From assembly GCA_900088475.1 (NCBI GenBank), contig FLMG01002090.1, positions 1-64,000 of the forward strand: DNA of 64,000 nucleotides, written 5' to 3'. Of this stretch, positions 8,143 through 22,091 are shown piece after piece. Both the position numbers and the translations under genes were made by a program. The DNA is from Hyphochytrium catenoides (Eukaryota; Protista; Hyphochytriomycota). How positions within the stretch are numbered: the first letter of the stretch is position 1; each line of letters begins with the position of its first letter. The notes under the pieces were generated by a model. That model saw only the letters and a program-made list of their open reading frames with translations. It had not been told where the DNA came from and did not search any database.

Positions 8143-9304
8143 TCTACTCAGCCTGTGCTCCTCGGCACGACTGCTTGACTTGACTTCCTTGACCTGACTT
8201 CCTTGACCTCTCCTCTGCAGGCAAAGATCTCTGCCCTATTGCGACGACAGACTTCAAGCACCTGCTGAGGACGGACGATGCGTCGGAAATTTGCTGACAA
8301 ATCTGCCCCTGATACTCGTCTCTGAGAACAGAAAACATGTCAAATTGGTATTGTCTCCCCATCCACTAAGCAAAGCTCTTTAGCTTTCCTAGGGTGACAT
8401 ACATTCTCCTGAAGCCTTTATAGAAGAATCGCTGATTTTATAAAGTGCCCGCTGCATATCTTTGTATTCTGACATTGTTTTATCAGGGACCCCTTTAGAA
8501 TACTCAAACTCCATTCCGCAAAGTTCCAGTGGCGAAGAACTAACGGAAGGAATTGGCATCCTGTTATGGTGGTTGAAAGAAGGGGAGACATGTTTCCACG
8601 AAACAAGGAAACATCTGCAATATTGCCTGGAGAAGTTCTGAGAGCCGTGCCATTGAACACAAGCACAAGTGGATTGTGGTATGCTGTGTGCTGTAAACCA
8701 AACCTAGCAGAATAGTATGAGCTCAACCGCCACAATCGCATAATCTCTAATAAGAACCCCAACTCCAACAGCTTTCCGACTAGTTCTACTAGCAGGAGTC
8801 TTTTTTCAATTTGATTGCAATGGCCTTTCTTCTTCTGGCGTCTTTGAGGTCAAAAGACATGGCTTCCTCTTCTCGGACGAGAGGAGAGGGTTATTTGAGT
8901 GAAGGCATGTTTCTCGCAACCCAACCACTGATTCTTCACTGATCCTTCAAAACCGTTCAAATTCTTGTCTACAGGAATGATAACCTGCTATTGTAGGACG
9001 TTGTCAATGAGAACGTTGTGACTCAGAAAGTGCAGAACCTTACAAGGCGTTACTTCTTCTAATAACCAAAATCTTTGTGTAGGGGCTTTTTCTTGTTGAA
9101 GCTTTCTATTGTTCTTCATTCTCACATTTGGTGAGTTCCTGTACTGACTCCTTCTCCTCTAACCCCCCCCCCAAGATCCCTTCCTTGCGATTTCAGAACT
9201 CAGTCTGCATGTTCTGTTGAGAATCTCTTTCTGGAGCACCAAGCTTCAGCAGACGAACTGTGCTTGATATAGCTGTAAAGAAGAAGATAACCTCAGACCG
9301 TAAG

Positions 9305-11479
9305 ATGGCCTCACCACCTCGAAGGGCAAAAGGTACTCCGCCTACACCAATGCAGCAGAGGGAGAACACCAAGCAGGCTAATACCATCTTAAAGAGGTAC
9401 AGAGCTCTTTGGGAGGAAAATCTTCCCGTCTGGAGCGAGCTCAAGACGAAAAGAGGATTTCAGGAGATAAAAGATGACGTCATGACAGAGACGGGCCTTA
9501 CACAAGCCGAGGCGATAACGCATATTAAAAAGGCTTATCGGAATATGCGCCAGTATTGCCAAAGAAGGCGAGATCGATTCATAGCGGAGCTTGATGAGAT
9601 TGACTTTGACGCCGTGCAGCGGGATGATGTCGACTTTCAAGCGGCGTCGGCTCCAGATCAGTTAACTGAGACAGAATGTGTTTGGACCCCAGTACCGCAA
9701 CCGATCATGGCTCTGGCAGCACTTGCTCCCAGCCTAAAGAGACTTGGAGTGTGGAGGAAACTTGGGGACAGAGCGGCAGAAGTCCTTTTTGAGAAGCTTC
9801 TTAAGGGTACGGATAAGCCGAAAACAGAGGAGCTTTTTCTATGGGACAACAATATATCCGACGTAGGTGCTATAGCACTGGCCAGCGCACTAGAAGACAA
9901 CAAGACTTTGAAGACGCTTACCGTATTCCTCAACATGATAGGTCATGAGGGGGTAAGAGCGTTAGCCGAGGTGCTCAGCAACGGCAAGGTTGCTCTTCAA
10001 CAGCTTCGTTTGAAGCTTGGGCGTATCAAAGATGAGGATGTGATAGTCCTGGCAGAGGCACTTCAGAACAACAATACCCTGACAGCTGTAAGCCTACGTA
10101 ATAACCACATTGGCAGAGACGGCGCAGTGGCAATGGCCAATTTAGTAAAGGTAAACACTACCTTAAGAGAGCTAGCGATTGGCCACAGCAGTATTGGTAT
10201 TGGCGATGCGGGTGCGAAGTACTTAGCCGAAGCACTTCAAGGATCAAGGACAGTGTTGGAGTACATCGATCTGGACGGTAACAAGATCGGGGATGAGGGT
10301 GCAGCGGCTATGGCGCGGGTACTTAAGAAAAAAACAAAGGAAAACGGAGCCTTAATGGGTCTCTCTCTAGAATCAAATTGTATTAGTGCGGTTGGTGCGG
10401 AAGAATTGGCCATTAGCCTAAAGGATAACACTAGCCTGCAAGAACTACACCTCTACCGCAATAGAATCGGTGATTGCGGTGCTATTGCCTTTAGAGATGT
10501 ATTAATGGCCAATGAGTCCCTGAAGAAAGTCGATTTAGGGCACAACGAGATCTCTGCAAGAGGTGCACATGCTATAGCCTCCGCGCTCCTCCCAACCTCT
10601 GGACTAACATGGCTTAACTTGTCAGACAACTCTGTGGGTGATGAGGGAGCGAAAGCCTTAGCCCAAGCGCTGAGAGGTTGTCCTTTGGTGTATCTTGATC
10701 TAGGCGAAAGCCAAATCGCTAGGAATGGGGCTGGTTACCTGTCAGACGCTCTCAAGCACAATCGTACTTTGCAGGAGCTCCGCCTCAGCTGCTGCGGTAT
10801 GGCCAACAGCGGTGCGATAGCCCTTAGCGAAGGCCTAGAAGGAAACGTCACCTTACGGTCAATTGACCTACGGGAGAACGCAATCACTGCCAGTGGAGCA
10901 GTAGCACTTGTAAGTGCGCTCGGCGGTACGGATTCTGTGGTACAACATCTTGATTTGGGGACCAATAGCATTGGTGATTATGGCGCAGAGCAATTAAAGG
11001 AGGCAATCCTCAAAAAAAGAAAAAAAGACGGCTCCAGGTTGTTCGGCCTTAGCTTGGTGGAGAATAACGTTAGTGTCAAAGGCGCCACTTCTTTGGCAGA
11101 AGTACTCAAAGCGAATCCTGCATTGCAGCGGCTTGATCTAACTTTGAATCAGCTTGGTGATTTCGGTGTACAACGTCTCGCTGATGCGCTTAAGTTCAAC
11201 AGTCGCCTGCATGAACTCCGTCTCGGAGATGTCGACACTGGTGATTATGGTGTCGAGAGCTTAGCCACGACCCTTGCAGAGAACCACAGCTTAATTGAAC
11301 TCGACCTGGCAGGTAACAAAATTACTGCCAGTGGGGCAAGAAGGCTCGCTTTGGCGCTTCTTCTCGGCAACAAGACCCTGAAGAGACTTAACCTAAGCTA
11401 TAATCCTATCAACGCTGACGAGTTCGAAGCACTAAGCCCAGGAGATTTCAGTCTTTCTCTGGAAGAGCTCGATGTGTGA
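9305..11479 (+). CDS. Intronless ribonuclease-inhibitor-type (NLRC3-like) leucine-rich repeat protein with a short N-terminal helical domain
   Basis: About 19 repeats of ~28 aa, LxxLxLxxNxIGDxGAxALAxAL (e.g. LQELHLYRNRIGDCGAIAFRDVL). First in-frame ATG at 9305. No NACHT/P-loop seen. Confidence 0.9.
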   Translation: MASPPRRAKGTPPTPMQQRENTKQANTILKRYRALWEENLPVWSELKTKRGFQEIKDDVMTETGLTQAEAITHIKKAYRNMRQYCQRRRDRFIAELDEIDFDAVQRDDVDFQAASAPDQLTETECVWTPVPQPIMALAALAPSLKRLGVWRKLGDRAAEVLFEKLLKGTDKPKTEELFLWDNNISDVGAIALASALEDNKTLKTLTVFLNMIGHEGVRALAEVLSNGKVALQQLRLKLGRIKDEDVIVLAEALQNNNTLTAVSLRNNHIGRDGAVAMANLVKVNTTLRELAIGHSSIGIGDAGAKYLAEALQGSRTVLEYIDLDGNKIGDEGAAAMARVLKKKTKENGALMGLSLESNCISAVGAEELAISLKDNTSLQELHLYRNRIGDCGAIAFRDVLMANESLKKVDLGHNEISARGAHAIASALLPTSGLTWLNLSDNSVGDEGAKALAQALRGCPLVYLDLGESQIARNGAGYLSDALKHNRTLQELRLSCCGMANSGAIALSEGLEGNVTLRSIDLRENAITASGAVALVSALGGTDSVVQHLDLGTNSIGDYGAEQLKEAILKKRKKDGSRLFGLSLVENNVSVKGATSLAEVLKANPALQRLDLTLNQLGDFGVQRLADALKFNSRLHELRLGDVDTGDYGVESLATTLAENHSLIELDLAGNKITASGARRLALALLLGNKTLKRLNLSYNPINADEFEALSPGDFSLSLEELDV

Positions 11480-15045: not shown

Positions 15046-18000
15046 ATAGCAAGATGTAGCCTTATCTAACAGCAGCTGCACGCGTACGACGCACAATCCC
15101 CACAACTACTTTTTTGGCGGCGGAGATTTGGTCATCGAAGCGGCTCTGAGCCTCAGAAAATAGAGTTCCAGAGACCGAAGACCAGACACGCAGATCCAGA
15201 GATCCAATGAAGATCCAGCAGAGACAGGGTAGGCAGGCAAGGTGGGACGCAGCGATGCTGAGGTGCCCCAGGACAAGGTGGGACAATCAAGGTGTTGTCT
15301 GCTTCCTCTTCCTTGACCAGTCATCTTGTTAGTTGACCTTGACAACCGTGACGTTGTTTGTCTATTGATTTGGCTGGGTTGGTGGGCGATACAACAAGTT
15401 GAAGAGATAAGAAGCATTAATGATAGCGACCTGACCTTCAGGTGTGAAAGGAAGAATAGTGGAGATAAGAGCGGAGGCTAAGGCCAGGTGTCCAATAGCC
15501 GTCAGTGACTCTGCGATGCCGAGAAGCGGACGTGAGAGCACATCATATCAGTGCAGCTGCAATGAACCTTACTGCCTACAAACCATGATAATAGTGCTTC
15601 CTGCATCCGTCGTTGAAGTAGAGTGAGGACGTCTACCGAATCGTCCTCCTCTTCCTTCTTGCCAGCTGCAAGTCCCTTTCTTTTCATCATACTGCCTGCA
15701 AACTCCTTCTTCTTCGCTTCTCTTCTTGCTCCGATCCCGCAACTGCAAGGTGGAGAGATGTGTCGCTTGTTGCTGGTCTTGTTGCCCATCATCCTGCCCT
15801 TAGTATTGTCTCCTTGATATCTCCGTGGTCTTGGGGCTGGGGGCGAGCCATCGTTGGAATAGCACGGCGGTAGTTGTCCTTCCTGGTTTGATAAGGCTTG
15901 CATCTCCATGTATTAGCTGGTCACATTGGCAGCCAACAACGGGCTTGATTCTGCCCCAACAGGTCATCGATCAGAGACCCATGACAGGGACCATGGATGG
16001 AAGATACTGGCTGCCCCATCTCTTACTTGGCACCTACTACTTTTGCAGCTCTTCGCTTGACAGAAGACAAGTGAGGCGCGAAGTAACCCTTATCATGATA
16101 GTAACCGACGAGTGACAAGTTGCCTTGGAAGAGAGGAGAGGAATAAAACCATTTGTGGTTGTTCTTCTTTCTTCCTGACCGACCGACCTTAGAAAGTTGT
16201 GCTTGACTAGGGAAGCAGCCTTGAGACAAGGGCAGGCTAGGATCGATGGTAACAAGCTCAATTCCGCGCTTCTAAATTAGCCCTCGCACGTTTCTGACAA
16301 CAAGGGCAAGACCGACCTTGGGAGGAGGGAGGAGGAGCATTCAGCAAGACGTTTCTGTTCTTGCACTTTGGCGGTTGGTAAGTGAGTGGCTGAGGGCGAA
16401 AACTTGTTAGCCAATTTCCGCTTTCTTCTTAGTGCGTCGTGCTTCCAAAGAGCACATACTTCGAAAGGAATGTGAGGCAGGAATGAGGTGAGAGACCAGG
16501 AGACAAACATCATCGGAAGCAGAGAGAAGAGGCGAGGCGAGGCCGAGTGGCAAGAGTTGACTAAAGGAGGTAGGAAACAGCGCAGAAGCACGAAGAGACA
16601 ATGTCACAGAAAGCAGAAAAAGGGAGACCCAAGTCTTCCTTTCCGACCTACAGCTACGGAAGAAAAGAGGCACTCGCCGACCCTCGTAGGGCCAGGGAGA
16701 GACGTGCCCGTACTAATCAAAAGAAAGAGGCGTTAGAGGGACTAATGAAGAATTAGAGGAGCAAAAGAAGACATCGAGGTACTGTCACACCTGAGACATC
16801 GGCACACATCCATTGCTGTCGAAGAGTTGGGATGACGGACCTTGTGACGCTGTGAGAGACGAAGGAGGAGGACACCAACAAGAGAGCCGTATCGAGAAGA
16901 GAAGAGCGTGAGAGAAGAAAGCTCTCTCCCAAGAGTCCGTCGTCCTCGGCAGGGGTCGATGATGCTGGACCATCAGCCTTCCACTTGCGCTGCTCCTCCA
17001 ATGTCCAAGACACAGATAAATCTGGAAACTATCTAGGGCAATCCAGCGCTGGCACACCCAGTTACTCTTGAGGATCGCTGTCTCGTCCTGCTTGCTCGTC
17101 TGTCCTTGCTTCTTGTTGCTCGACCCGCGGTGCCTTTCTTACCCTAGTGTCGGCACGTCTCTTCTCGTCTTCGTCTGCCCACTATCTCTTGCTCCCTGTC
17201 TCTGTCTTTCCATCTAGATTTCAAGACATACACCTACACGGGAAGAAATCCACTGGCAAGACTTTACTCGTCGAATGGCAATCTCTATCTCTATCTCTTT
17301 CTCTCTCTTTGCCTCAGAGGCACCAACAGGACAAGCTCCATTTGGTCTTTCTTCTGCCTCCCGGTTGCAGGAGGCGGCGGCCCCGTGACCATTCCTCTTC
17401 TCTCTTTTCTCCCTTGTTCCTGTTGCTGTCCATTCTCTCTTGATCTTTTCGGATTCTTCTTGGCCCTTCCTAGTGGATATATCCAGAGCCCCAGAGCCAA
17501 CTATCAAGCAGCAGCAAAGGCCGGGAGTCTCTCCTCTTCTCTTTGTCTTCGTTCGTCTTCTTTCTTCTCTTCCTACCTTTCACTTGTGCCATTGAAGAAG
17601 AACGAAGTTGAAGAGAAAGGCGGGCTTTAGGTGGCGATCTTGAACGGCAAATTGCAGAAGGTGCTCGCCACTACTTCTCGTCAGATCTTCTTGCTGCTGC
17701 TTCTGGGCTACTTTTGAGCTTTCTCTAGTTTAATATTTGTCTCCTTGTTCTTTTCTCTCGTGACTCAAGCTCGAACCCGTCTGTCACTCTCTTCACTCCT
17801 GCAGGTGGCCTTGTATCTTGCTTAAGATCCTGTCAGACAGACAGCGGCGGAGAAAGGAAAGAGAAGAAAAGTCAAGACAGCAGAAGGAAGGAAGAAGCAG
17901 CTCCTCTCTTCTCTTCTCCCGTGGCCATCACAAGTCCTGCTGCTACGCATCTCGTCTCTCCAACAGCTCATTTCCTAATCTTCCGACCAGAGAGAAGAAC

Positions 18001-18100
18001 AACGCTTGAGAAGACCGCCCAACAGCCGAACAACCAGCCCTGCGTGGAGGTTCTCTGTCTCTCGCTCTCTCTCTTCCACCGAGCAGCAGCGGTAAGCAAG

Positions 18101-20620
18101 ATGCAGCTCTCAACGATCACCAGCAGTCTCTTTCTCCTTTCAACGTCATCTCTCCTTTGGGAAGCGTCTCTCGGGCTGAATGACGGGGATGTCTCAAGGA
18201 TCTTCACCTATCTCTCCAGCGATGTAGGGCCTGAAGGCCGCCAGTCTGGAGGTTCCTACCGCTCAGGCACCACTGGCAAACAGCTTCCTCTCTCTTACTG
18301 GGCCTCCCGCGAATACTTTGGTGAGTATGTCTGCAAGAAAGAAGATTGCACTGTCTTGGACGTTTATAACCCGCAAACCTATGAGCTCTTCCCTTCGAAG
18401 ACGACGGAGAAGGGTGGAGAGCTGCAGATTGAGCGAGTGATGACGGTGACAGGGATCAACATCTATGACGCGGCATGCTTCCAGATCGCCACCTCTTTGG
18501 GGGCTGTAAACCACGCAGAGAAGAGAGAGACTCTCCTCTCTCTCTCCAAGAATGTGGACTCCTGGCTGACCGACGGGGTTGCCGGAGAGGAGCCTAACGG
18601 TGTCAAGCATAGCTGGCGTGCTCCTACCCGCTGGGATGGGCTCTTCCACTACGGCACCACGCCTATTAAGACGCCTAACAACGCTTATTTCTTCCGCGCT
18701 TGGCCTCGCCGTTGGCTGCAGTTTGACCCGTTCGCAGGGACGCAATATGAAAAGTATATCACGACGGACCTGTCAGGTGCTACGGATCCTGTCTATCAGA
18801 AGGGAAAGATGACCTGGGCGGACTTCAAGCCAATCACTGGGGAGAACTCGTGGGGCGTGTACCTTGGGCCCCTGCAGTCTATCTACCTGCGGGAGGTTGT
18901 CCTAGGAGGGAAGAAGTGCGTGGATCTCAGTGCTGACGCCGTCCGGAACGCTATCGATGTGCTGGTGGCGGTGAAGGCGATGCAATCTCCCTATGGAGCT
19001 GTGTACTACGCAGCCAGAGGATCTCTAGGGAACCAAGGAGACACGCCAGTGGACGTCGACTCCGTCTCTGTGGAGAACAACGCCTCGCTGTACGCGGGTT
19101 TGAAGGTCCTTCTCTCGCTCTTAGAGATGTTGCAAAAGAACAGCTGCCCTGTCGATGCGTCCCGCCTCTCTGCAGTGCAGAAAACCGTGACGGAGATCCT
19201 GCAGAATATGGAGAAGTTCTTCATTAACTACGCCTGGGATCCAACCACAAAGCTCATCCGTACGGGCGGCTATGCCAGAGCTTCTGGCTTTATCCCGTAT
19301 GATCTTAATGATCCGTCTAACCCGCAGGCTGTGGATGTCATCACATGGGGCATCTCCGCGCTATCTCCACGATTCTTTGAAGAATCCGTAGCCCGATCGG
19401 CTGGAGAATCTGTCCGTGTCTGGCAGAAGCTGAAGAAGATCTCTGGATATTTCTCCGCCTCTAGCGGTAAGTTTATGGGCGTGGGCTATAGCAGCTTGGA
19501 CGGGAACAAGATCTTGTCTGGAGAGTGGACCTTCGGCGCCATCAACTTCTTGAGGATGGTGAAAGCCTACTATGAGGAAGAGAAAGACAAAGTCGCAGAA
19601 TTGGCTGGCTATCTTCCTGAGATAGAGGAGGATATCGCTCTGATGCTGGCGGGAGTGGAGAATCTAAGGACAGACACGTATGCGACAGCTGGTGACGGGC
19701 TGGAGCAGGAGAGACCCGAGGGCTGGGGACAGCTCATCTCTCTGTCTTCCTCGAACCAACTTGCCTATCTCTATGCCTCCAAGAGGTACTTCATCCCCTT
19801 TGGATGGTATGCTAATCCTCTTCCCTCCACGGCCTCCACATCCTGGGCGCTGATGGTGCACTACGGCTTCAACCCTTTCAACCTGGGAGGATCTTACGGC
19901 TCTCCTTCCTCTTCTTCTCCATCTCCTCTCCCTTCTCCTACACCTGTTCCTACGACAGTCTCTCCTTCTGCCGCTCCATCCTCCGCTCCATCCTCTTCTC
20001 TTCCTCCATCTGCTCCCCCATCGCCTTCTCCTCCTAGCCCCGCACCATCGCCTAGCCCGCCGTCTCCCTCTCCTACACTCTCCCCTCCTTCTCCCATTCC
20101 GTCTCCCATTCCCTCTCCCACTCCCTCTCCTCCTTCGCCTACTCCGGTCGTGACTCCTGCTCCTCCTGCTCCAGAACAATGCCCAGGTTACTCTCAGACT
20201 ATCTCGGGCCTCTCGCTCTCTGGTGGTGACATTGGTAAAGCGTCTGCCTCCTCTTCCTCTGGCTGTTGCTCTCTTTGCACGGGCCCATGCGAGGCATTTA
20301 CTTGGTCCTCTGAGAACGGAGGAACGTGCTCTTTCAAGAGCTCTCAGGCAGGCATCTCTGTTCCAGTCACTGACGGTGCAGGAGAGAAGGTGACAGCTTT
20401 CAAGAGCGGGGTACTCTTCAGGAAGACCCTTCTTTCTGGCGAAGAGATGGAGAAGCTCTCCTCCTCCACTCCTACAGAGTGCCTGGCAACCTGTCGAGGA
20501 AGATCTGGATGCAAGGGCGCCACCTGGGACGCCTTCAGCACGGGGAACGTCTGCTGGTTGCTGAAGAGCGTAACAGGTGCGGCTCCAGGCGGAGAGACGC
20601 GCTTTTCGGGCTTTCCTTAG
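18101..20620 (+). CDS. Secreted protein: unclassified ~580-aa domain (putative six-hairpin glycosidase-like), Pro/Ser linker, two PAN/Apple domains; intronless
   Basis: ATG at 18101 gives signal peptide MQLSTITSSLFLLSTSSLLWEASLG. Globular domain ends ...YFIPFGWYANPLPSTASTSW..GFNPF. A ~90-aa P/S/T linker follows, then PAN motifs GCCSLCTGPCEAFTWSSENGGTCSFK and CLATCRGRSGCKGATW...CWLLK. Confidence 0.85.
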   Translation: MQLSTITSSLFLLSTSSLLWEASLGLNDGDVSRIFTYLSSDVGPEGRQSGGSYRSGTTGKQLPLSYWASREYFGEYVCKKEDCTVLDVYNPQTYELFPSKTTEKGGELQIERVMTVTGINIYDAACFQIATSLGAVNHAEKRETLLSLSKNVDSWLTDGVAGEEPNGVKHSWRAPTRWDGLFHYGTTPIKTPNNAYFFRAWPRRWLQFDPFAGTQYEKYITTDLSGATDPVYQKGKMTWADFKPITGENSWGVYLGPLQSIYLREVVLGGKKCVDLSADAVRNAIDVLVAVKAMQSPYGAVYYAARGSLGNQGDTPVDVDSVSVENNASLYAGLKVLLSLLEMLQKNSCPVDASRLSAVQKTVTEILQNMEKFFINYAWDPTTKLIRTGGYARASGFIPYDLNDPSNPQAVDVITWGISALSPRFFEESVARSAGESVRVWQKLKKISGYFSASSGKFMGVGYSSLDGNKILSGEWTFGAINFLRMVKAYYEEEKDKVAELAGYLPEIEEDIALMLAGVENLRTDTYATAGDGLEQERPEGWGQLISLSSSNQLAYLYASKRYFIPFGWYANPLPSTASTSWALMVHYGFNPFNLGGSYGSPSSSSPSPLPSPTPVPTTVSPSAAPSSAPSSSLPPSAPPSPSPPSPAPSPSPPSPSPTLSPPSPIPSPIPSPTPSPPSPTPVVTPAPPAPEQCPGYSQTISGLSLSGGDIGKASASSSSGCCSLCTGPCEAFTWSSENGGTCSFKSSQAGISVPVTDGAGEKVTAFKSGVLFRKTLLSGEEMEKLSSSTPTECLATCRGRSGCKGATWDAFSTGNVCWLLKSVTGAAPGGETRFSGFP

Positions 20621-21013
20621 GGGTTTTTACTTCGTGCCATGCTCGAGCTGGAAGCAGTTCTTCCAAGCTCTTTTAAGGTCCTTGTCCGTTCGTAAGATTC
20701 TATTAACTGAGAAGATAAGAAAAAGTCTTTAAGACTTGACTTTATTGAGTGTCCTGGTTGGCTGTCTGTGCCTTTGGAAAGAGAGAATCAGAGGATACGA
20801 GAGAAGAGAAGGCGTACTAGTAGGGAGAAGAGAAGAGGAAGGAGAGAGAAGAAAGAGAGAAAGACAAGGCATTAGTAGGAAGACATCGGAAGGCAATGGT
20901 AGGATTAGGGATGTGGGCGGCGATGTGGAGGCTACAATCAGACCCACAAGTTGGTTATTAATAGGCCAACAAGAAGAGGAGTTTTTCCCGTTTCTTTCTT
21001 TCTCTCTCCCTCT

Positions 21014-21058
<45 letters not shown>

Positions 21059-21141
21059 NNNNNNNNNNNNNNNNNNNNNNNNNNNNNNNNNNNNNNNNNN
21101 NNNNNNNNNNNNNNNNNNNNNNNNNNNNNNNNNNNNNNNNN
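21059..21141. other. Assembly gap (N run); other gaps at 22517-22600, 23723-23760 and 33321-33371
   Basis: N runs; the first two abut CT/GA microsatellites. Confidence 1.
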
Positions 21142-22091
21142 TAAGCGAAGCACTGGTACTCCAGGATCTCTCCTTTGAAGTAGGTAAACTTCTTGCCTGA
21201 AGGCAGAAGCCAGCTCACTTCCGCCTTGGATGGAAGAAGAAAGCCCTGGAAGTCTTTGTACTCCTTGCACAGCGCCTCCCAGGGCCGGAGAGAGAGAGAA
21301 CCGTCGGGTTCCGTAAAGTTTCTCTCTTCCGTCCACGCTTTGGAGATGAGCCCTCCCTCTCCCTTGAACTCTAAGATCACACTCGCCGTCACGCCGCTGA
21401 CTGTTAAGCTCACCTCAACATTCGTCTGGTCTCTCTCTTTCCACCGAAGAGAAGGAGAGAGAAGACAGAGAGAGGGATAGAAGACAATCTCTGCCAAGTA
21501 TCTCTGCAGCTCTCCCTGCATAAGCTCCTTCGAATGCTCCATCTTCGCGACAGGGAGAACGCCATAGACTCGTGCCTGCAGAGCAGCCTGCCCGTCAATA
21601 ATCCTGTCACACACCGTGACGGACAGGAAAGGACCCAGCATCCTCATCTTCGCTGTCCAGGAGAAAGCAGCGAGGGAGAGAGACACGAACTGAGAGGCTT
21701 CGAAGGGAACATATCTCTCTCCTTTCTCTCCTCCCTCTTTCATTGCAAAGAGTCCTCTCTGTGTGAAGTGCACGTAGCGGGAAGACATTGGATCTCTCCA
21801 TCCGTTTCTCTCCGGGCCCTCAGAAGAGGGAAGAACCCGCTCTAGATACCGCTGAACGAGCTTTGGGAGACAATTCATCCTCTCTTCCTTTCTCTTTCGT
21901 CTTCTCTCCGCTTCTTCTTCCTCTTCCAAGGAAGAGAGAGATGCCGGGGGTCCTTCTGGTGGGCTCTTTATGATGATCCATTCCTCTCCTTTCCTCAGCC
22001 ACTCTGCGTACCGTGTCTTCATGGTAAGCAAGAGTCCCGAGGAGCTGACGACTGCCACTGCGGCGGCAGAGAGTAAGACTGAGATCCACAT
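21141..22091 (-). CDS. DUF6544-like protein with N-terminal signal anchor; intronless
   Basis: Motifs LP..VQRYL, TQRG.F, F.ASQF, FSW.A, D...DG......GVLPV, GELQRYLAE..FYP, W...D, RPW...YK.F.G..LP.KAEV.W match my recollection of this mostly prokaryotic family. Probable stop TAN at the edge of the N gap (...CFA). Confidence 0.75.

What the first reader, a model, noticed from the sequence alone, without database searches (positions are those of the whole stretch)
18101..20620. Candidate unclassified carbohydrate-active enzyme (secreted domain + P/S linker + PAN x2)
Seen: classic CAZyme layout of signal peptide, large domain, O-glycosylatable linker and binding modules. The large domain matches no GH motif I recognise. 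Acidic and aromatic motifs NIYDAA, KPITGEN, SVENNASLY, AVDVITWG, GEWTFGA and ASTSW..GFNPF are spaced like an (alpha/alpha)6 barrel. Recollection, unverified: similar sequences occur in trypanosomatid Golgi/lysosome glycoproteins and hypothetical bacterial proteins. Inference: a new GH or transglycosylase family, perhaps acting on beta-glucan.
Basis: partly seen in the sequence, partly recalled or inferred. Interest (0 to 1): 0.7.

Follow-up and report, generated by a model that had tools for sequence, protein, structure and literature searches.

The report
Secreted six-hairpin enzyme, uncharacterised family
A protist gene encodes a secreted enzyme-like protein whose large domain has a glycosidase fold but belongs to a sizeable, unnamed, mostly bacterial family, and relatives fused to beta-1,3-glucan-binding modules suggest a new kind of beta-glucan-acting enzyme.

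Summary
Window 18101-20620 (+) is one intronless 839-codon gene with a signal peptide, a 576-aa domain, a 93-aa linker that is 81% Pro/Ser/Thr, and two PAN domains.

Their core residues are invariant in 69 homologues of about 40% identity.

The large domain has no Pfam, NCBIfam or PDB sequence match. Its AlphaFold model (pLDDT 94) is an (alpha/alpha)6 barrel. The nearest solved structure is the mycobacterial mannosidase MmpH (Z 30, 11% identity), followed by many six-hairpin glycosidase families (Z 20-24).

An exhaustive profile search finds 423 clusters. They are almost all bacterial "hypothetical proteins": Chlamydiota, Desulfobulbales, Methylococcales and giant Omnitrophota proteins. Two separate small eukaryotic clades also appear, the window's own and a diplonemid one.

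Three relatives carry beta-1,3-glucan-binding modules. A Hahella protein and one unnamed protein carry CBM56. A Hemistasia protein carries X8.

Best reading: this is a eukaryotic member of an unclassified glycoside hydrolase or transglycosylase family, probably acting on beta-1,3-glucan. The bacteria-to-protist direction of transfer is inferred and no donor could be named. Catalysis and substrate are untested, and dbCAN could not be run.

The parts
18101..20620 (+). Whole intronless coding sequence, 839 aa plus stop codon
   Evidence: ORF listing and sequence. Collinear alignment with homologues.
18101..18172 (+). Putative signal peptide, residues 1-24
   Evidence: Hydrophobic N-terminus read directly from the translation. 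126 of 142 homologues that start with Met also have an N-terminal hydrophobic segment. No dedicated predictor was run.
18173..19900 (+). Six-hairpin (alpha/alpha)6 glycosidase-like domain of an uncharacterised family, residues 25-600
   Evidence: AF2 model with pLDDT 94.1 and pTM 0.94. VIA Z 30.1 to MmpH and Z 20-24 to GH15/76/94/88/63 and others. 324-423 homologues without Pfam.
18458..18475 (+). Motif NIYDAA (Y122, D123) at the start of inner helix 1
   Evidence: Y122 and D123 invariant in 69/69. Helix 97-113 of the model.
18827..18847 (+). Motif KPITGEN (E248, N249) at the start of inner helix 2
   Evidence: Invariant in 69/69. E248 is over 90% conserved in the divergent set.
19067..19093 (+). 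Motif SVENNASLY (E325) at the start of inner helix 3; candidate catalytic carboxylate
   Evidence: E325 invariant in A2 and in the divergent alignment A4.
19328..19351 (+). Motif AVDVITWG (D412, W416) at the start of inner helix 4
   Evidence: D412 and W416 invariant in A2 and A4.
19520..19540 (+). Motif GEWTFGA (E475, W476) at the start of inner helix 5; candidate catalytic carboxylate
   Evidence: E475 invariant in A2 and A4.
19832..19879 (+). Motifs ASTSW (W582) and GFNPF in and after inner helix 6
   Evidence: W582 and P592 invariant.
19901..20179 (+). Pro/Ser/Thr-rich linker, residues 601-693
   Evidence: 81% P+S+T. 12- and 24-nt tandem repeats lie inside it.
20189..20356 (+). PAN/apple domain 1
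   Evidence: Pfam PAN_1 21.5 bits against a cut-off of 21.4 when scanned alone.
20417..20581 (+). PAN/apple domain 2
   Evidence: Pfam PAN_1 23.9 bits and PAN_4 23.3 bits.

Best explanation
The gene encodes a secreted modular protein.

**Catalytic-like domain.** Residues 25-600 form a six-hairpin (alpha/alpha)6 barrel. It belongs to a large protein family that Pfam, NCBIfam and the PDB do not cover. The six invariant motifs each sit in the loop and N-terminal turn of one inner helix. Together they would line the funnel at one end of the barrel, as in other six-hairpin glycosidases.

**Proposed chemistry.** I infer that the domain cleaves or transfers a glycosidic bond with a pair of carboxylates. 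The most likely pair comes from E325, E475 and D412, which are invariant even in the most divergent relatives. D123 and E248 would assist. The conserved Trp, Tyr and Arg residues would stack on and hold the sugar.

**Proposed substrate.** The most likely substrate is a beta-1,3-linked glucan, either wall glucan or laminarin-type storage glucan. This rests on relatives that are naturally fused to two unrelated beta-1,3-glucan-binding modules, CBM56 and X8/CBM43.

**Linker and PAN modules.** The Pro/Ser/Thr linker (probably O-glycosylated) and the two PAN/apple modules would tether the enzyme to a wall or target surface.

**Origin.** The eukaryotic copies form a small clade inside an overwhelmingly bacterial family. 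I take this to mean the gene reached protists from bacteria and then gained host-type binding modules.

**Shown:** gene structure, domain architecture, fold, family membership and conservation, and the fusions in relatives.
**Inferred:** catalysis, the catalytic residues, the substrate, the role of PAN, and the direction of transfer.
For: **Gene and architecture:**

**Fold:**
- AF2 model with pLDDT 94.1 and twelve alternating helices.
- Foldseek: all significant hits are (alpha/alpha)6 carbohydrate enzymes, with GH116 and GH94 on top.
- VIA-align against 48,161 chains: MmpH at Z 30.1, rmsd 2.8 A over 315 residues. Then GH8-like, GH15, GH76, GH94, GH88, GH63 and GH100 at Z 20-24.

**Family:**
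- 324 hits at about 40% identity, all without Pfam.
- 423 clusters at 50% identity in an exhaustive search of 1.84 billion representatives.
- Relatives in 140 of 185,579 species genomes.

**Conservation at helix N-termini:**. E325, D412 and E475 remain invariant in a 46-sequence alignment whose members are only 24-47% identical to its first sequence, with 10% mean column identity.

**Not an AGE-type enzyme:** there is no invariant His, which argues against His-dependent AGE-type epimerase chemistry.

**Secretion:** 126 of 142 homologues have N-terminal hydrophobic segments.

**Substrate hints from fusions:**
- Hahella ganghwensis WP_020405514.1 (P0172) is 34% identical to the window domain over 565 residues (E = 3e-81) with all motifs kept. 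It carries two CBM_56 modules (E = 1.3e-30).
- P0177 carries CBM_56 plus fn3.
- The Hemistasia protein P0243 carries an N-terminal X8 (E = 3e-14).
- CBM56 binds beta-1,3-glucan chains and accompanies GH81 and GH64 beta-1,3-glucanases (PMC7915573; PMC9609564).
- CBM43 (the CAZy module that corresponds to Pfam X8, from my own knowledge) binds beta-1,3-glucan (PMC11758075).

**Eukaryotic clade:**
- The window protein groups with P0001, P0007 and P0094 at 98-100% support.
- P0007 lies between CAND1, Rab GDI and GCD14 genes.
- P0094 lies beside FHA and NIF genes.
Against: - No enzyme of this family has been assayed, and I could not run dbCAN.
- I could not measure distances between carboxylates or confirm that they face a cleft, because model coordinates are not exposed.
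- The nearest solved structure (MmpH) and much of the next tier (GH15, GH76, GH125-like, GH63) act on alpha-linked mannose or glucose, not beta-glucan.
- GH81, the known (alpha/alpha)6 beta-1,3-glucanase, is not among the top 50 structural neighbours.
- The beta-1,3-glucan signal rests on only 3 of about 150 inspected relatives.
- Other fusions point elsewhere: LysM, a GT5 starch/glycogen-synthase domain, and PKD and LRR.
- The window protein itself carries PAN, whose ligand is unknown. The PAN region found no relatives in the word search.
- Bacterial gene neighbourhoods are not conserved and give no operon-level clue.
- No RNA run was listed, so expression is unconfirmed.
Confidence: 0.55

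Rival explanations
1. It is a six-hairpin hydrolase, but for an alpha-linked glycan (alpha-mannan or methylmannan, or alpha-glucan/glycogen). It would work by the inverting acid/base mechanism of MmpH, GH15 and GH125. An Asp in the first hairpin loop (D123) would be the acid and a Glu on the fifth inner helix (E475) the base.
For: - MmpH is the clear top structural neighbour (Z 30.1 against 24 or less for the rest).
- In MmpH the acid Asp47/Asp50 lies in the first helix-helix loop and the base is Glu262, with an inverting mechanism (PMC9883506). The window's D123 and E475 occupy topologically similar positions.
- One Omnitrophota relative is fused to a GT5 glycogen/starch-synthase domain.
- Five Desulfobulbales loci place the gene next to sucrose-phosphate synthase and sucrose synthase.
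Against: - Identity to MmpH is only 11%, and a family profile does not find it in the PDB even at E <= 10.
- MmpH is a minimal 345-aa barrel, which may inflate its Z relative to larger targets.
- I could not obtain a residue-level superposition.
- The only carbohydrate-binding modules of known specificity that are fused to family members and point to a polysaccharide substrate are beta-1,3-glucan binders.
- The GT5 fusion lies in the distant subfamily B.
Confidence: 0.2
2. It is a non-hydrolytic (alpha/alpha)6 enzyme acting on sugars: a glycan phosphorylase, epimerase/isomerase, lyase or unsaturated-uronyl hydrolase.
For: AGE-family epimerases and isomerases, GH94 phosphorylases and GH88/GH105 enzymes score Z 21-24, about the same as the true glycosidases.
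Against: - No invariant His is present. From my own knowledge, AGE-type epimerases and isomerases depend on catalytic His residues.
- The protein and most relatives are secreted or periplasmic, which is an unusual place for phosphorylases.
- No polysaccharide lyase appears among the top 50 neighbours.
Confidence: 0.08
3. It is a non-catalytic glycan-binding or structural wall protein that merely keeps a glycosidase-like fold.
For: - No activity data exist.
- The domain occurs in giant multi-domain surface proteins, up to three copies in one 3600-aa protein.
Against: Invariant Asp/Glu, Trp and Arg across hundreds of sequences at 25-45% identity, all at inner-helix N-termini, is the pattern of a conserved active site rather than a scaffold.
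Confidence: 0.07
4. It is a very divergent member of an already defined CAZy family, for example GH81 or one of the recently created (alpha/alpha)6 families, that Pfam, NCBIfam and the PDB do not yet represent.
For: - CAZy/dbCAN could not be queried here.
- New (alpha/alpha)6 families are created regularly.
Against: - No Pfam, NCBIfam or PDB sequence or profile hit.
- The best structural neighbour has 11% identity.
- GH81 is absent from the top 50.
- All named relatives are 'hypothetical' or are named after accessory domains.
- Literature searches found no description.
Confidence: 0.1

Closest known systems
MmpH, endo-alpha-1,4-(3-O-methyl)mannosidase of Mycolicibacterium hassiacum (PDB 7QSJ; PMC9883506)
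   Same: It is the closest solved structure, with Z 30.1 and rmsd 2.8 A over 315 residues. It is also an (alpha/alpha)6 barrel with an acidic central cavity. An Asp in the first inter-helix loop and a Glu late in the chain serve as acid and base.
   Different: - Identity is only 11%, and no sequence or profile similarity is detectable.
- MmpH is a cytosolic 345-aa minimal barrel.
- The window domain has about 230 extra residues, namely an N-terminal segment and beta-rich insertions.
- The window protein also has a signal peptide, a linker and PAN modules.
- The substrates are probably different.
GH81 endo-beta-1,3-glucanases with CBM56 (for example Bacillus halodurans BH0236 and Paenibacillus PsLam81A)
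   Same: The catalytic module is an (alpha/alpha)6 barrel (from my own knowledge of GH81 structures). The architecture is a catalytic domain plus CBM56 (PMC7915573, PMC9609564), mirrored by the Hahella relative P0172. The proposed substrate is the same.
   Different: - No Pfam Glyco_hydro_81 signal at E <= 1.
- GH81 is not among the top 50 structural neighbours.
- From my own knowledge, GH81 also has additional beta-sandwich domains that this family lacks.
Clan GH-L/GH-G type six-hairpin enzymes (GH15 glucoamylase/glucodextranase, GH125, GH63, GH100 invertase) and GH76, GH94, GH116
   Same: They share the fold at Z 20-24. The active site is formed by conserved loops at the N-termini of the inner helices.
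   Different: - No sequence similarity.
- Different motif set.
- This family has its own long insertions.
Oomycete-type modular secreted proteins with PAN/apple modules (CBEL-like) and other catalytic-domain / Pro-Ser-linker / CBM layouts
   Same: The layout is signal peptide, catalytic domain, O-glycosylatable linker and C-terminal binding modules.
   Different: - The PAN modules here are only marginally above the Pfam threshold.
- They have no detectable close relatives.
- Their ligand is unknown.

Membership tests
Six-hairpin (alpha/alpha)6 glycosidase-like superfamily | Twelve helices in six hairpins forming an inner and an outer ring | tested here: met
   The AF2 model (pLDDT 94.1) has alternating helices 76-92, 97-113, 115-134, 222-244, 255-270, 300-322, 329-352, 387-406, 412-424, 450-470, 481-498 and 553-563. 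Z 20-30 to dozens of (alpha/alpha)6 enzymes.
Six-hairpin (alpha/alpha)6 glycosidase-like superfamily | Conserved carboxylates and aromatics in the loops and N-termini of inner helices, lining a funnel | tested here: inconclusive
   Invariant D123, E248, E325, D412, E475 and W582 each sit at the start of one inner helix.
MmpH family | Detectable sequence homology to MmpH | tested here: not met
   A family profile against all PDB sequences at E <= 10 does not retrieve 7QSJ. Structural alignment identity is 11%.
GH81 | Match to Glyco_hydro_81 / Glyco_hydro81C models, or close structural match | tested here: not met
   No Pfam hit at E <= 1 for the protein. No hit at E <= 10 in 69 members. Absent from the top 50 structural neighbours.
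GH15 / GH125 / GH63 / GH76 / GH94 / GH116 | Match to the family's sequence model | tested here: not met
   No Pfam or NCBIfam hit. The resemblance is at fold level only.
AGE (N-acylglucosamine 2-epimerase) superfamily enzymes | Conserved catalytic histidines | tested here: not met
   No His is among the residues conserved in 97% or more of 69 homologues.
PAN/apple domain | Pfam PAN_1 score above the gathering threshold | tested here: met
   34.2 bits for the pair. 21.5 and 23.9 bits individually against a cut-off of 21.4. Four or more Cys per module are visible in the translation.
Any CAZy GH family (dbCAN) | dbCAN HMM or CAZy BLAST assignment | not testable with these tools
   No reference sequence was obtainable. 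No named trypanosomatid protein is among the 120-150 best hits of three searches. Diplonemid (Euglenozoa) relatives do exist.

The most novel reading that the evidence does not exclude
This is a eukaryotic founder-grade member of a genuinely new glycoside hydrolase (or transglycosylase) family for beta-1,3-glucan. The family would be distinct from GH81 and from every other (alpha/alpha)6 family. It would have entered protists from bacteria at least twice, once in the window's clade and once in the diplonemid clade. Each time it would have been fitted with a host-type targeting module: PAN here, and X8 or LRR in the diplonemid-related clade.
Probability: 0.35. Interest if true: 0.72.

Novelty: new variant of a known kind. 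Interest (0 to 1): 0.6.

Why it matters
If the domain is catalytic, it defines a glycoside hydrolase family that current annotation misses. The family has at least 423 sequence clusters.

It is present in environmental Chlamydiota, sulfate reducers, methanotrophs, Omnitrophota giant surface proteins and at least two protist lineages. A beta-1,3-glucan specificity would add a new enzyme class for laminarin, callose, paramylon and wall-glucan turnover. That is relevant to marine carbon cycling and to wall remodelling in fungus-like protists.

The family also looks like a clean case of a bacterial enzyme domain acquired by eukaryotes and then fused to eukaryote-type binding modules.

The proposal is directly testable. 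The Hahella orthologue and residues 25-600 of this protein are single-domain and intronless. The candidate catalytic residues are named.

Tried and rejected
- **Expression check.** No RNA run was listed for 17600-21000, so I did not use read laying. Transcription and the 5' end remain unverified.
- **PAN region.** A word search with residues 690-839 gave no hits, so the PAN subtype and ligand stay open.
- **Profile against the PDB.** Only a spurious MBP-huntingtin match at E = 0.12.
- **Weak-hit Pfam census.** The 69 members show no consistent family.
- **Gene neighbourhood.** I called and clustered ORFs in the 80 bacterial loci fetched and Pfam-scanned cluster representatives.
  - No neighbour is conserved across phyla.
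  - Local patterns exist: a Cache-type chemoreceptor adjacent in about 17 loci; EamA plus sucrose-phosphate synthase plus sucrose synthase in 5 Desulfobulbales loci; a GH18-like/deacetylase/GT2 synthase in 7 Desulfobulbus loci; and envelope genes.
  - I judged these too heterogeneous to assign a function.
- **Donor lineage.**
  - The eukaryotic clade is monophyletic.
  - Its sister is either a long-branch Oligoflexus sequence or unresolved.
  - An AU test rejects 'eukaryotes plus all rows labelled Chlamydiota' as one clade (p = 3.6e-06). This is uninformative, because the labelled Chlamydiota are not one clade themselves.
  - I therefore name no donor.
- **Trypanosomatid claim.** Papers mention the protein only as an organelle marker, and no sequence was available.
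- **Residue-level superposition on MmpH.** Not possible with the outputs given.
- **Contamination.** I rejected this reading for three reasons:
  - The gene sits in a 64-kb eukaryotic window.
  - It is fused in frame to a P/S linker and PAN modules.
  - Its GC3 (0.61) is comparable to its neighbours' (0.49-0.57).
Full report
**The object.** Window 17921-20620 (+) is a single 899-codon open frame. Its first ATG, at 18101, gives an 839-aa protein that ends at the stop 20618-20620. The N-terminus (residues 1-24) is hydrophobic and looks like a signal peptide. I judged this by eye, because no predictor was available. The frame needs no intron, since residues 25-600 align collinearly with bacterial homologues from end to end. 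The surrounding window is eukaryotic according to earlier notes of this scan, which I did not check. Those notes describe multi-exon histidine kinases and a 13-intron receptor gene. The gene's GC3 (0.61) is comparable to its neighbours' (0.49-0.57). There is no second copy in the window.

**Architecture.** Pfam finds only PAN domains (PAN_1 at 34.2 bits, PAN_4 at 26.3 bits). Scanned separately, each C-terminal half passes the PAN_1 gathering score, but only just: 21.5 and 23.9 bits against a cut-off of 21.4. Residues 601-693 are 81% Pro/Ser/Thr and are built partly from 12- and 24-nt repeats.

- All seven motifs are present, at residues 120, 243, 323, 410, 474, 578 and 589.
- Against 69 homologues of about 40% identity, these residues are invariant: Y122, D123, K243, P244, I245, G247, E248, N249, E325, N326, D412, T415, W416, E475, W476, W582 and P592.
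- A deliberately divergent 46-sequence alignment has members only 24-47% identical to its first sequence and 10% mean column identity. In it, the Glu of VENN (E325), the Asp of AVDV (D412), the Glu of GEW (E475) and the Trp residues stay invariant. Y122, D123 and E248 stay above 90%.

**No known family by sequence.**
- NCBIfam gives nothing at E <= 1.
- Pfam gives nothing for the large domain.
- A census of all 69 aligned members at E <= 10 shows no recurring family.
- The protein and a family profile find nothing real in the PDB.
- The protein-language-model and structure atlas list only unnamed bacterial clusters as near neighbours. GH88, MGH1-like and GH15 appear only as distant leads.

**Fold.**
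- With the 69-sequence alignment, AlphaFold2 gives a very confident model: pLDDT 94.1, pTM 0.94, and no segment below 50.
- Its helices alternate as six hairpins.
- Each of the six conserved motifs falls in the loop and first turn of one inner helix. In model numbering these helices start at 97, 222, 300, 387, 450 and 553.
- From established knowledge of glucoamylase-type barrels, this is where six-hairpin enzymes form their active-site funnel.
- Foldseek's significant PDB hits are all (alpha/alpha)6 carbohydrate enzymes, with GH116 and GH94 first. TM-scores are low (about 0.4) and identity is 9-14%.
- VIA-align against 48,161 representative chains puts MmpH of M. hassiacum first: Z 30.1, rmsd 2.8 A, 315 residues aligned, 11% identity.
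- Well below MmpH lies a broad plateau at Z 20-24. It holds GH8-like CPF_2247, dextran dextrinase, GH15, GH76, GH94, GH88/105, GH63, GH100, AGE epimerases and terpene cyclases.
- Only about 315-375 of the 576 residues align to any known structure. The rest are family-specific insertions.
- The MmpH paper describes an inverting mechanism, with the acid Asp47/Asp50 in the first inter-helix loop and the base Glu262 (PMC9883506). The window's D123 and E475 are topologically similar. I could not obtain a residue-level superposition or inter-residue distances.

**The family.**
- The word-indexed search gave 324 hits (E down to 1e-127, 36-42% identity, typically 600-650 aa). All lack Pfam domains. 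Where named, they are 'hypothetical protein' from Chlamydiae, Methylococcaceae, Thiothrix, Desulfobulbus, Desulfopila and others.
- A scan of one genome per species found relatives in 140 of 185,579 species. These include Chlamydiota, Verrucomicrobiota, Desulfobulbales, Methylococcales, Thiodiazotropha, Steroidobacteraceae, Marinimicrobia, Rhodospirillaceae, Legionellales, two cyanobacteria and Oligoflexus. The family is therefore rare and patchy.
- 126 of 142 homologues that start with Met have an N-terminal hydrophobic segment. The family is therefore generally exported.
- An exhaustive HMMER search of 1.84 billion representatives, using a profile of the eukaryotic clade, found 423 clusters at E <= 1e-3 and 175 at E <= 1e-30.
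- A tree of 153 cores splits the family into two halves, each with 97% support.
  - Subfamily A holds the window's clade, Chlamydiota, the gammaproteobacterial and Desulfobulbales proteins, and a Hahella clade.
  - Subfamily B is dominated by giant multidomain Omnitrophota proteins. One 3600-aa bacterial protein in this half carries three copies.

**Eukaryotic members.**
- The window protein groups with three unnamed proteins (P0001, P0007, P0094) at 98-100% support in four trees.
- P0007 lies on metagenomic contigs between CAND1/TIP120, Rab GDI, GCD14 and galactokinase genes.
- P0094 lies beside FHA and NIF-phosphatase genes. These contigs are eukaryotic.
- No further member of this clade exists in either database.
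- The clade carries a Cys at residue 273 of the window protein that the aligned eukaryotic members share and that is otherwise absent from the 69-sequence alignment.
- A second, unrelated eukaryotic group sits in subfamily B. It holds proteins from the diplonemids Hemistasia, Namystynia and Diplonema japonicum (EukProt names).
- The same group holds LRR-bearing proteins. One of them is on a 2.5-Mb contig with Arp2/3 p34, BTB and WD40 genes.
- The sister of the window's clade is unresolved. It is either a long-branch Oligoflexus sequence or a polytomy with Chlamydiota, Methylococcales, Verrucomicrobiota and cyanobacteria.
- An AU test against a chlamydial grouping is uninformative, because the labelled Chlamydiota are not one clade.
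- A bacteria-to-protist direction is inferred from the family's overwhelming bacterial diversity. I name no donor.

**Functional clues.** Bacterial neighbourhoods are not conserved across phyla. The local associations are chemoreceptors, a sucrose-synthesis cluster, a GT2/deacetylase synthase and envelope genes. They are too mixed to use. Domain fusions say more.
- The Hahella ganghwensis protein WP_020405514.1 lies in the window's own subfamily. It is 34% identical to the window domain over 565 residues (E = 3e-81) with every motif retained. It ends in thrombospondin type-3 repeats and two CBM_56 modules (E = 1.3e-30).
- P0177 has fn3 plus CBM_56 (5.9e-21).
- The Hemistasia protein has an N-terminal X8 module (3e-14, above the Pfam cut-off).
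- CBM56 binds beta-1,3-glucan chains and accompanies GH81 and GH64 beta-1,3-glucanases (PMC7915573; PMC9609564).
- CBM43, the CAZy module that corresponds to Pfam X8 (my own knowledge), is a beta-1,3-glucan-binding module of GH72 transglycosylases (PMC11758075).
- So two unrelated beta-1,3-glucan binders are attached in both subfamilies.
- Beta-1,3-glucans are wall and storage polymers of fungus-like stramenopiles and of euglenozoans. That statement is general knowledge and was not tested here.
- Other fusions are counter-signals: LysM, a GT5 starch-synthase domain, PKD and LRR. So is the alpha-mannoside specificity of the closest structure.

**Verdict.**
- What remains inferred is catalysis itself, the identity of the acid/base pair, the substrate and the role of PAN. 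My candidates for the pair are E325, E475 and D412, assisted by D123 and E248.
- I rate it a new sequence family within a known fold class, of moderate-to-good interest.
- dbCAN, activity assays and a structure with ligand are the decisive steps.
- I could not test the trypanosomatid recollection.
- I did not use read laying because no run was listed.

Noticed in passing
window 20958-22091 (-): The convergent downstream ORF (377 aa) matches DUF6920/DUF6544 (E about 1e-47). It is interrupted by an assembly gap (Ns at 21059-21141) next to a (TC)n repeat at 20993-21058.
   Followed up: partly
window 9260-11479 (+): A 739-aa ORF is rich in LRR_6 (RNI-like) repeats (E = 4e-60). It is unrelated to the finding.
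   Followed up: partly
P0151, P0153, P0164, P0169, P0170, P0172, P0174, P0177, P0173, P0179, P0186, P0130 (C-terminal 115-140 aa): Many bacterial subfamily-A members share a module of about 120-135 aa with two Cys directly after the barrel. It occurs two or three times in P0164 and has no Pfam match. It may be an undescribed binding module.
   Followed up: partly
L087:8001-18803 (P0147) and other Omnitrophota proteins (P0175, P0196, P0201, P0208): Giant bacterial proteins of 1,400-5,300 aa embed this domain, up to three copies in one 3600-aa protein. They combine it with PKD, FlgD_ig, Por_Secre_tail, GNAT or a GT5 glycogen/starch-synthase domain.
   Followed up: partly
L026, L027, L030, L048, L056 (Desulfobulbales loci): In these loci the family gene lies next to an EamA transporter, a sucrose-phosphate synthase/phosphatase fusion and, in two of them (L030, L056), a sucrose synthase. 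This local association with compatible-solute sucrose metabolism is unexplained.
   Followed up: partly
L029, L041, L058, L061, L062, L076, L078 (Desulfobulbus-type loci): A protein of about 1155 aa lies a few kb from the family gene. It combines a GH18-like region, a polysaccharide deacetylase and a GT2 (chitin/PNAG-synthase-like) domain.
   Followed up: no
P0243, P0249, P0287 (EukProt: Hemistasia, Namystynia, Diplonema japonicum); P0277 on L090: Diplonemids and an unidentified eukaryote (2.5-Mb contig) carry a separate, divergent clade of this family with Cys-rich, X8 or LRR extensions. This second eukaryotic lineage is independent of the window's.
   Followed up: partly
P0043, P0046, P0051, P0052, P0056, P0122 (about 820-841 aa chlamydial proteins): Several Chlamydiota versions have a C-terminal extension of about 200 aa with no Pfam domain. 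It is alignable among themselves.
   Followed up: no
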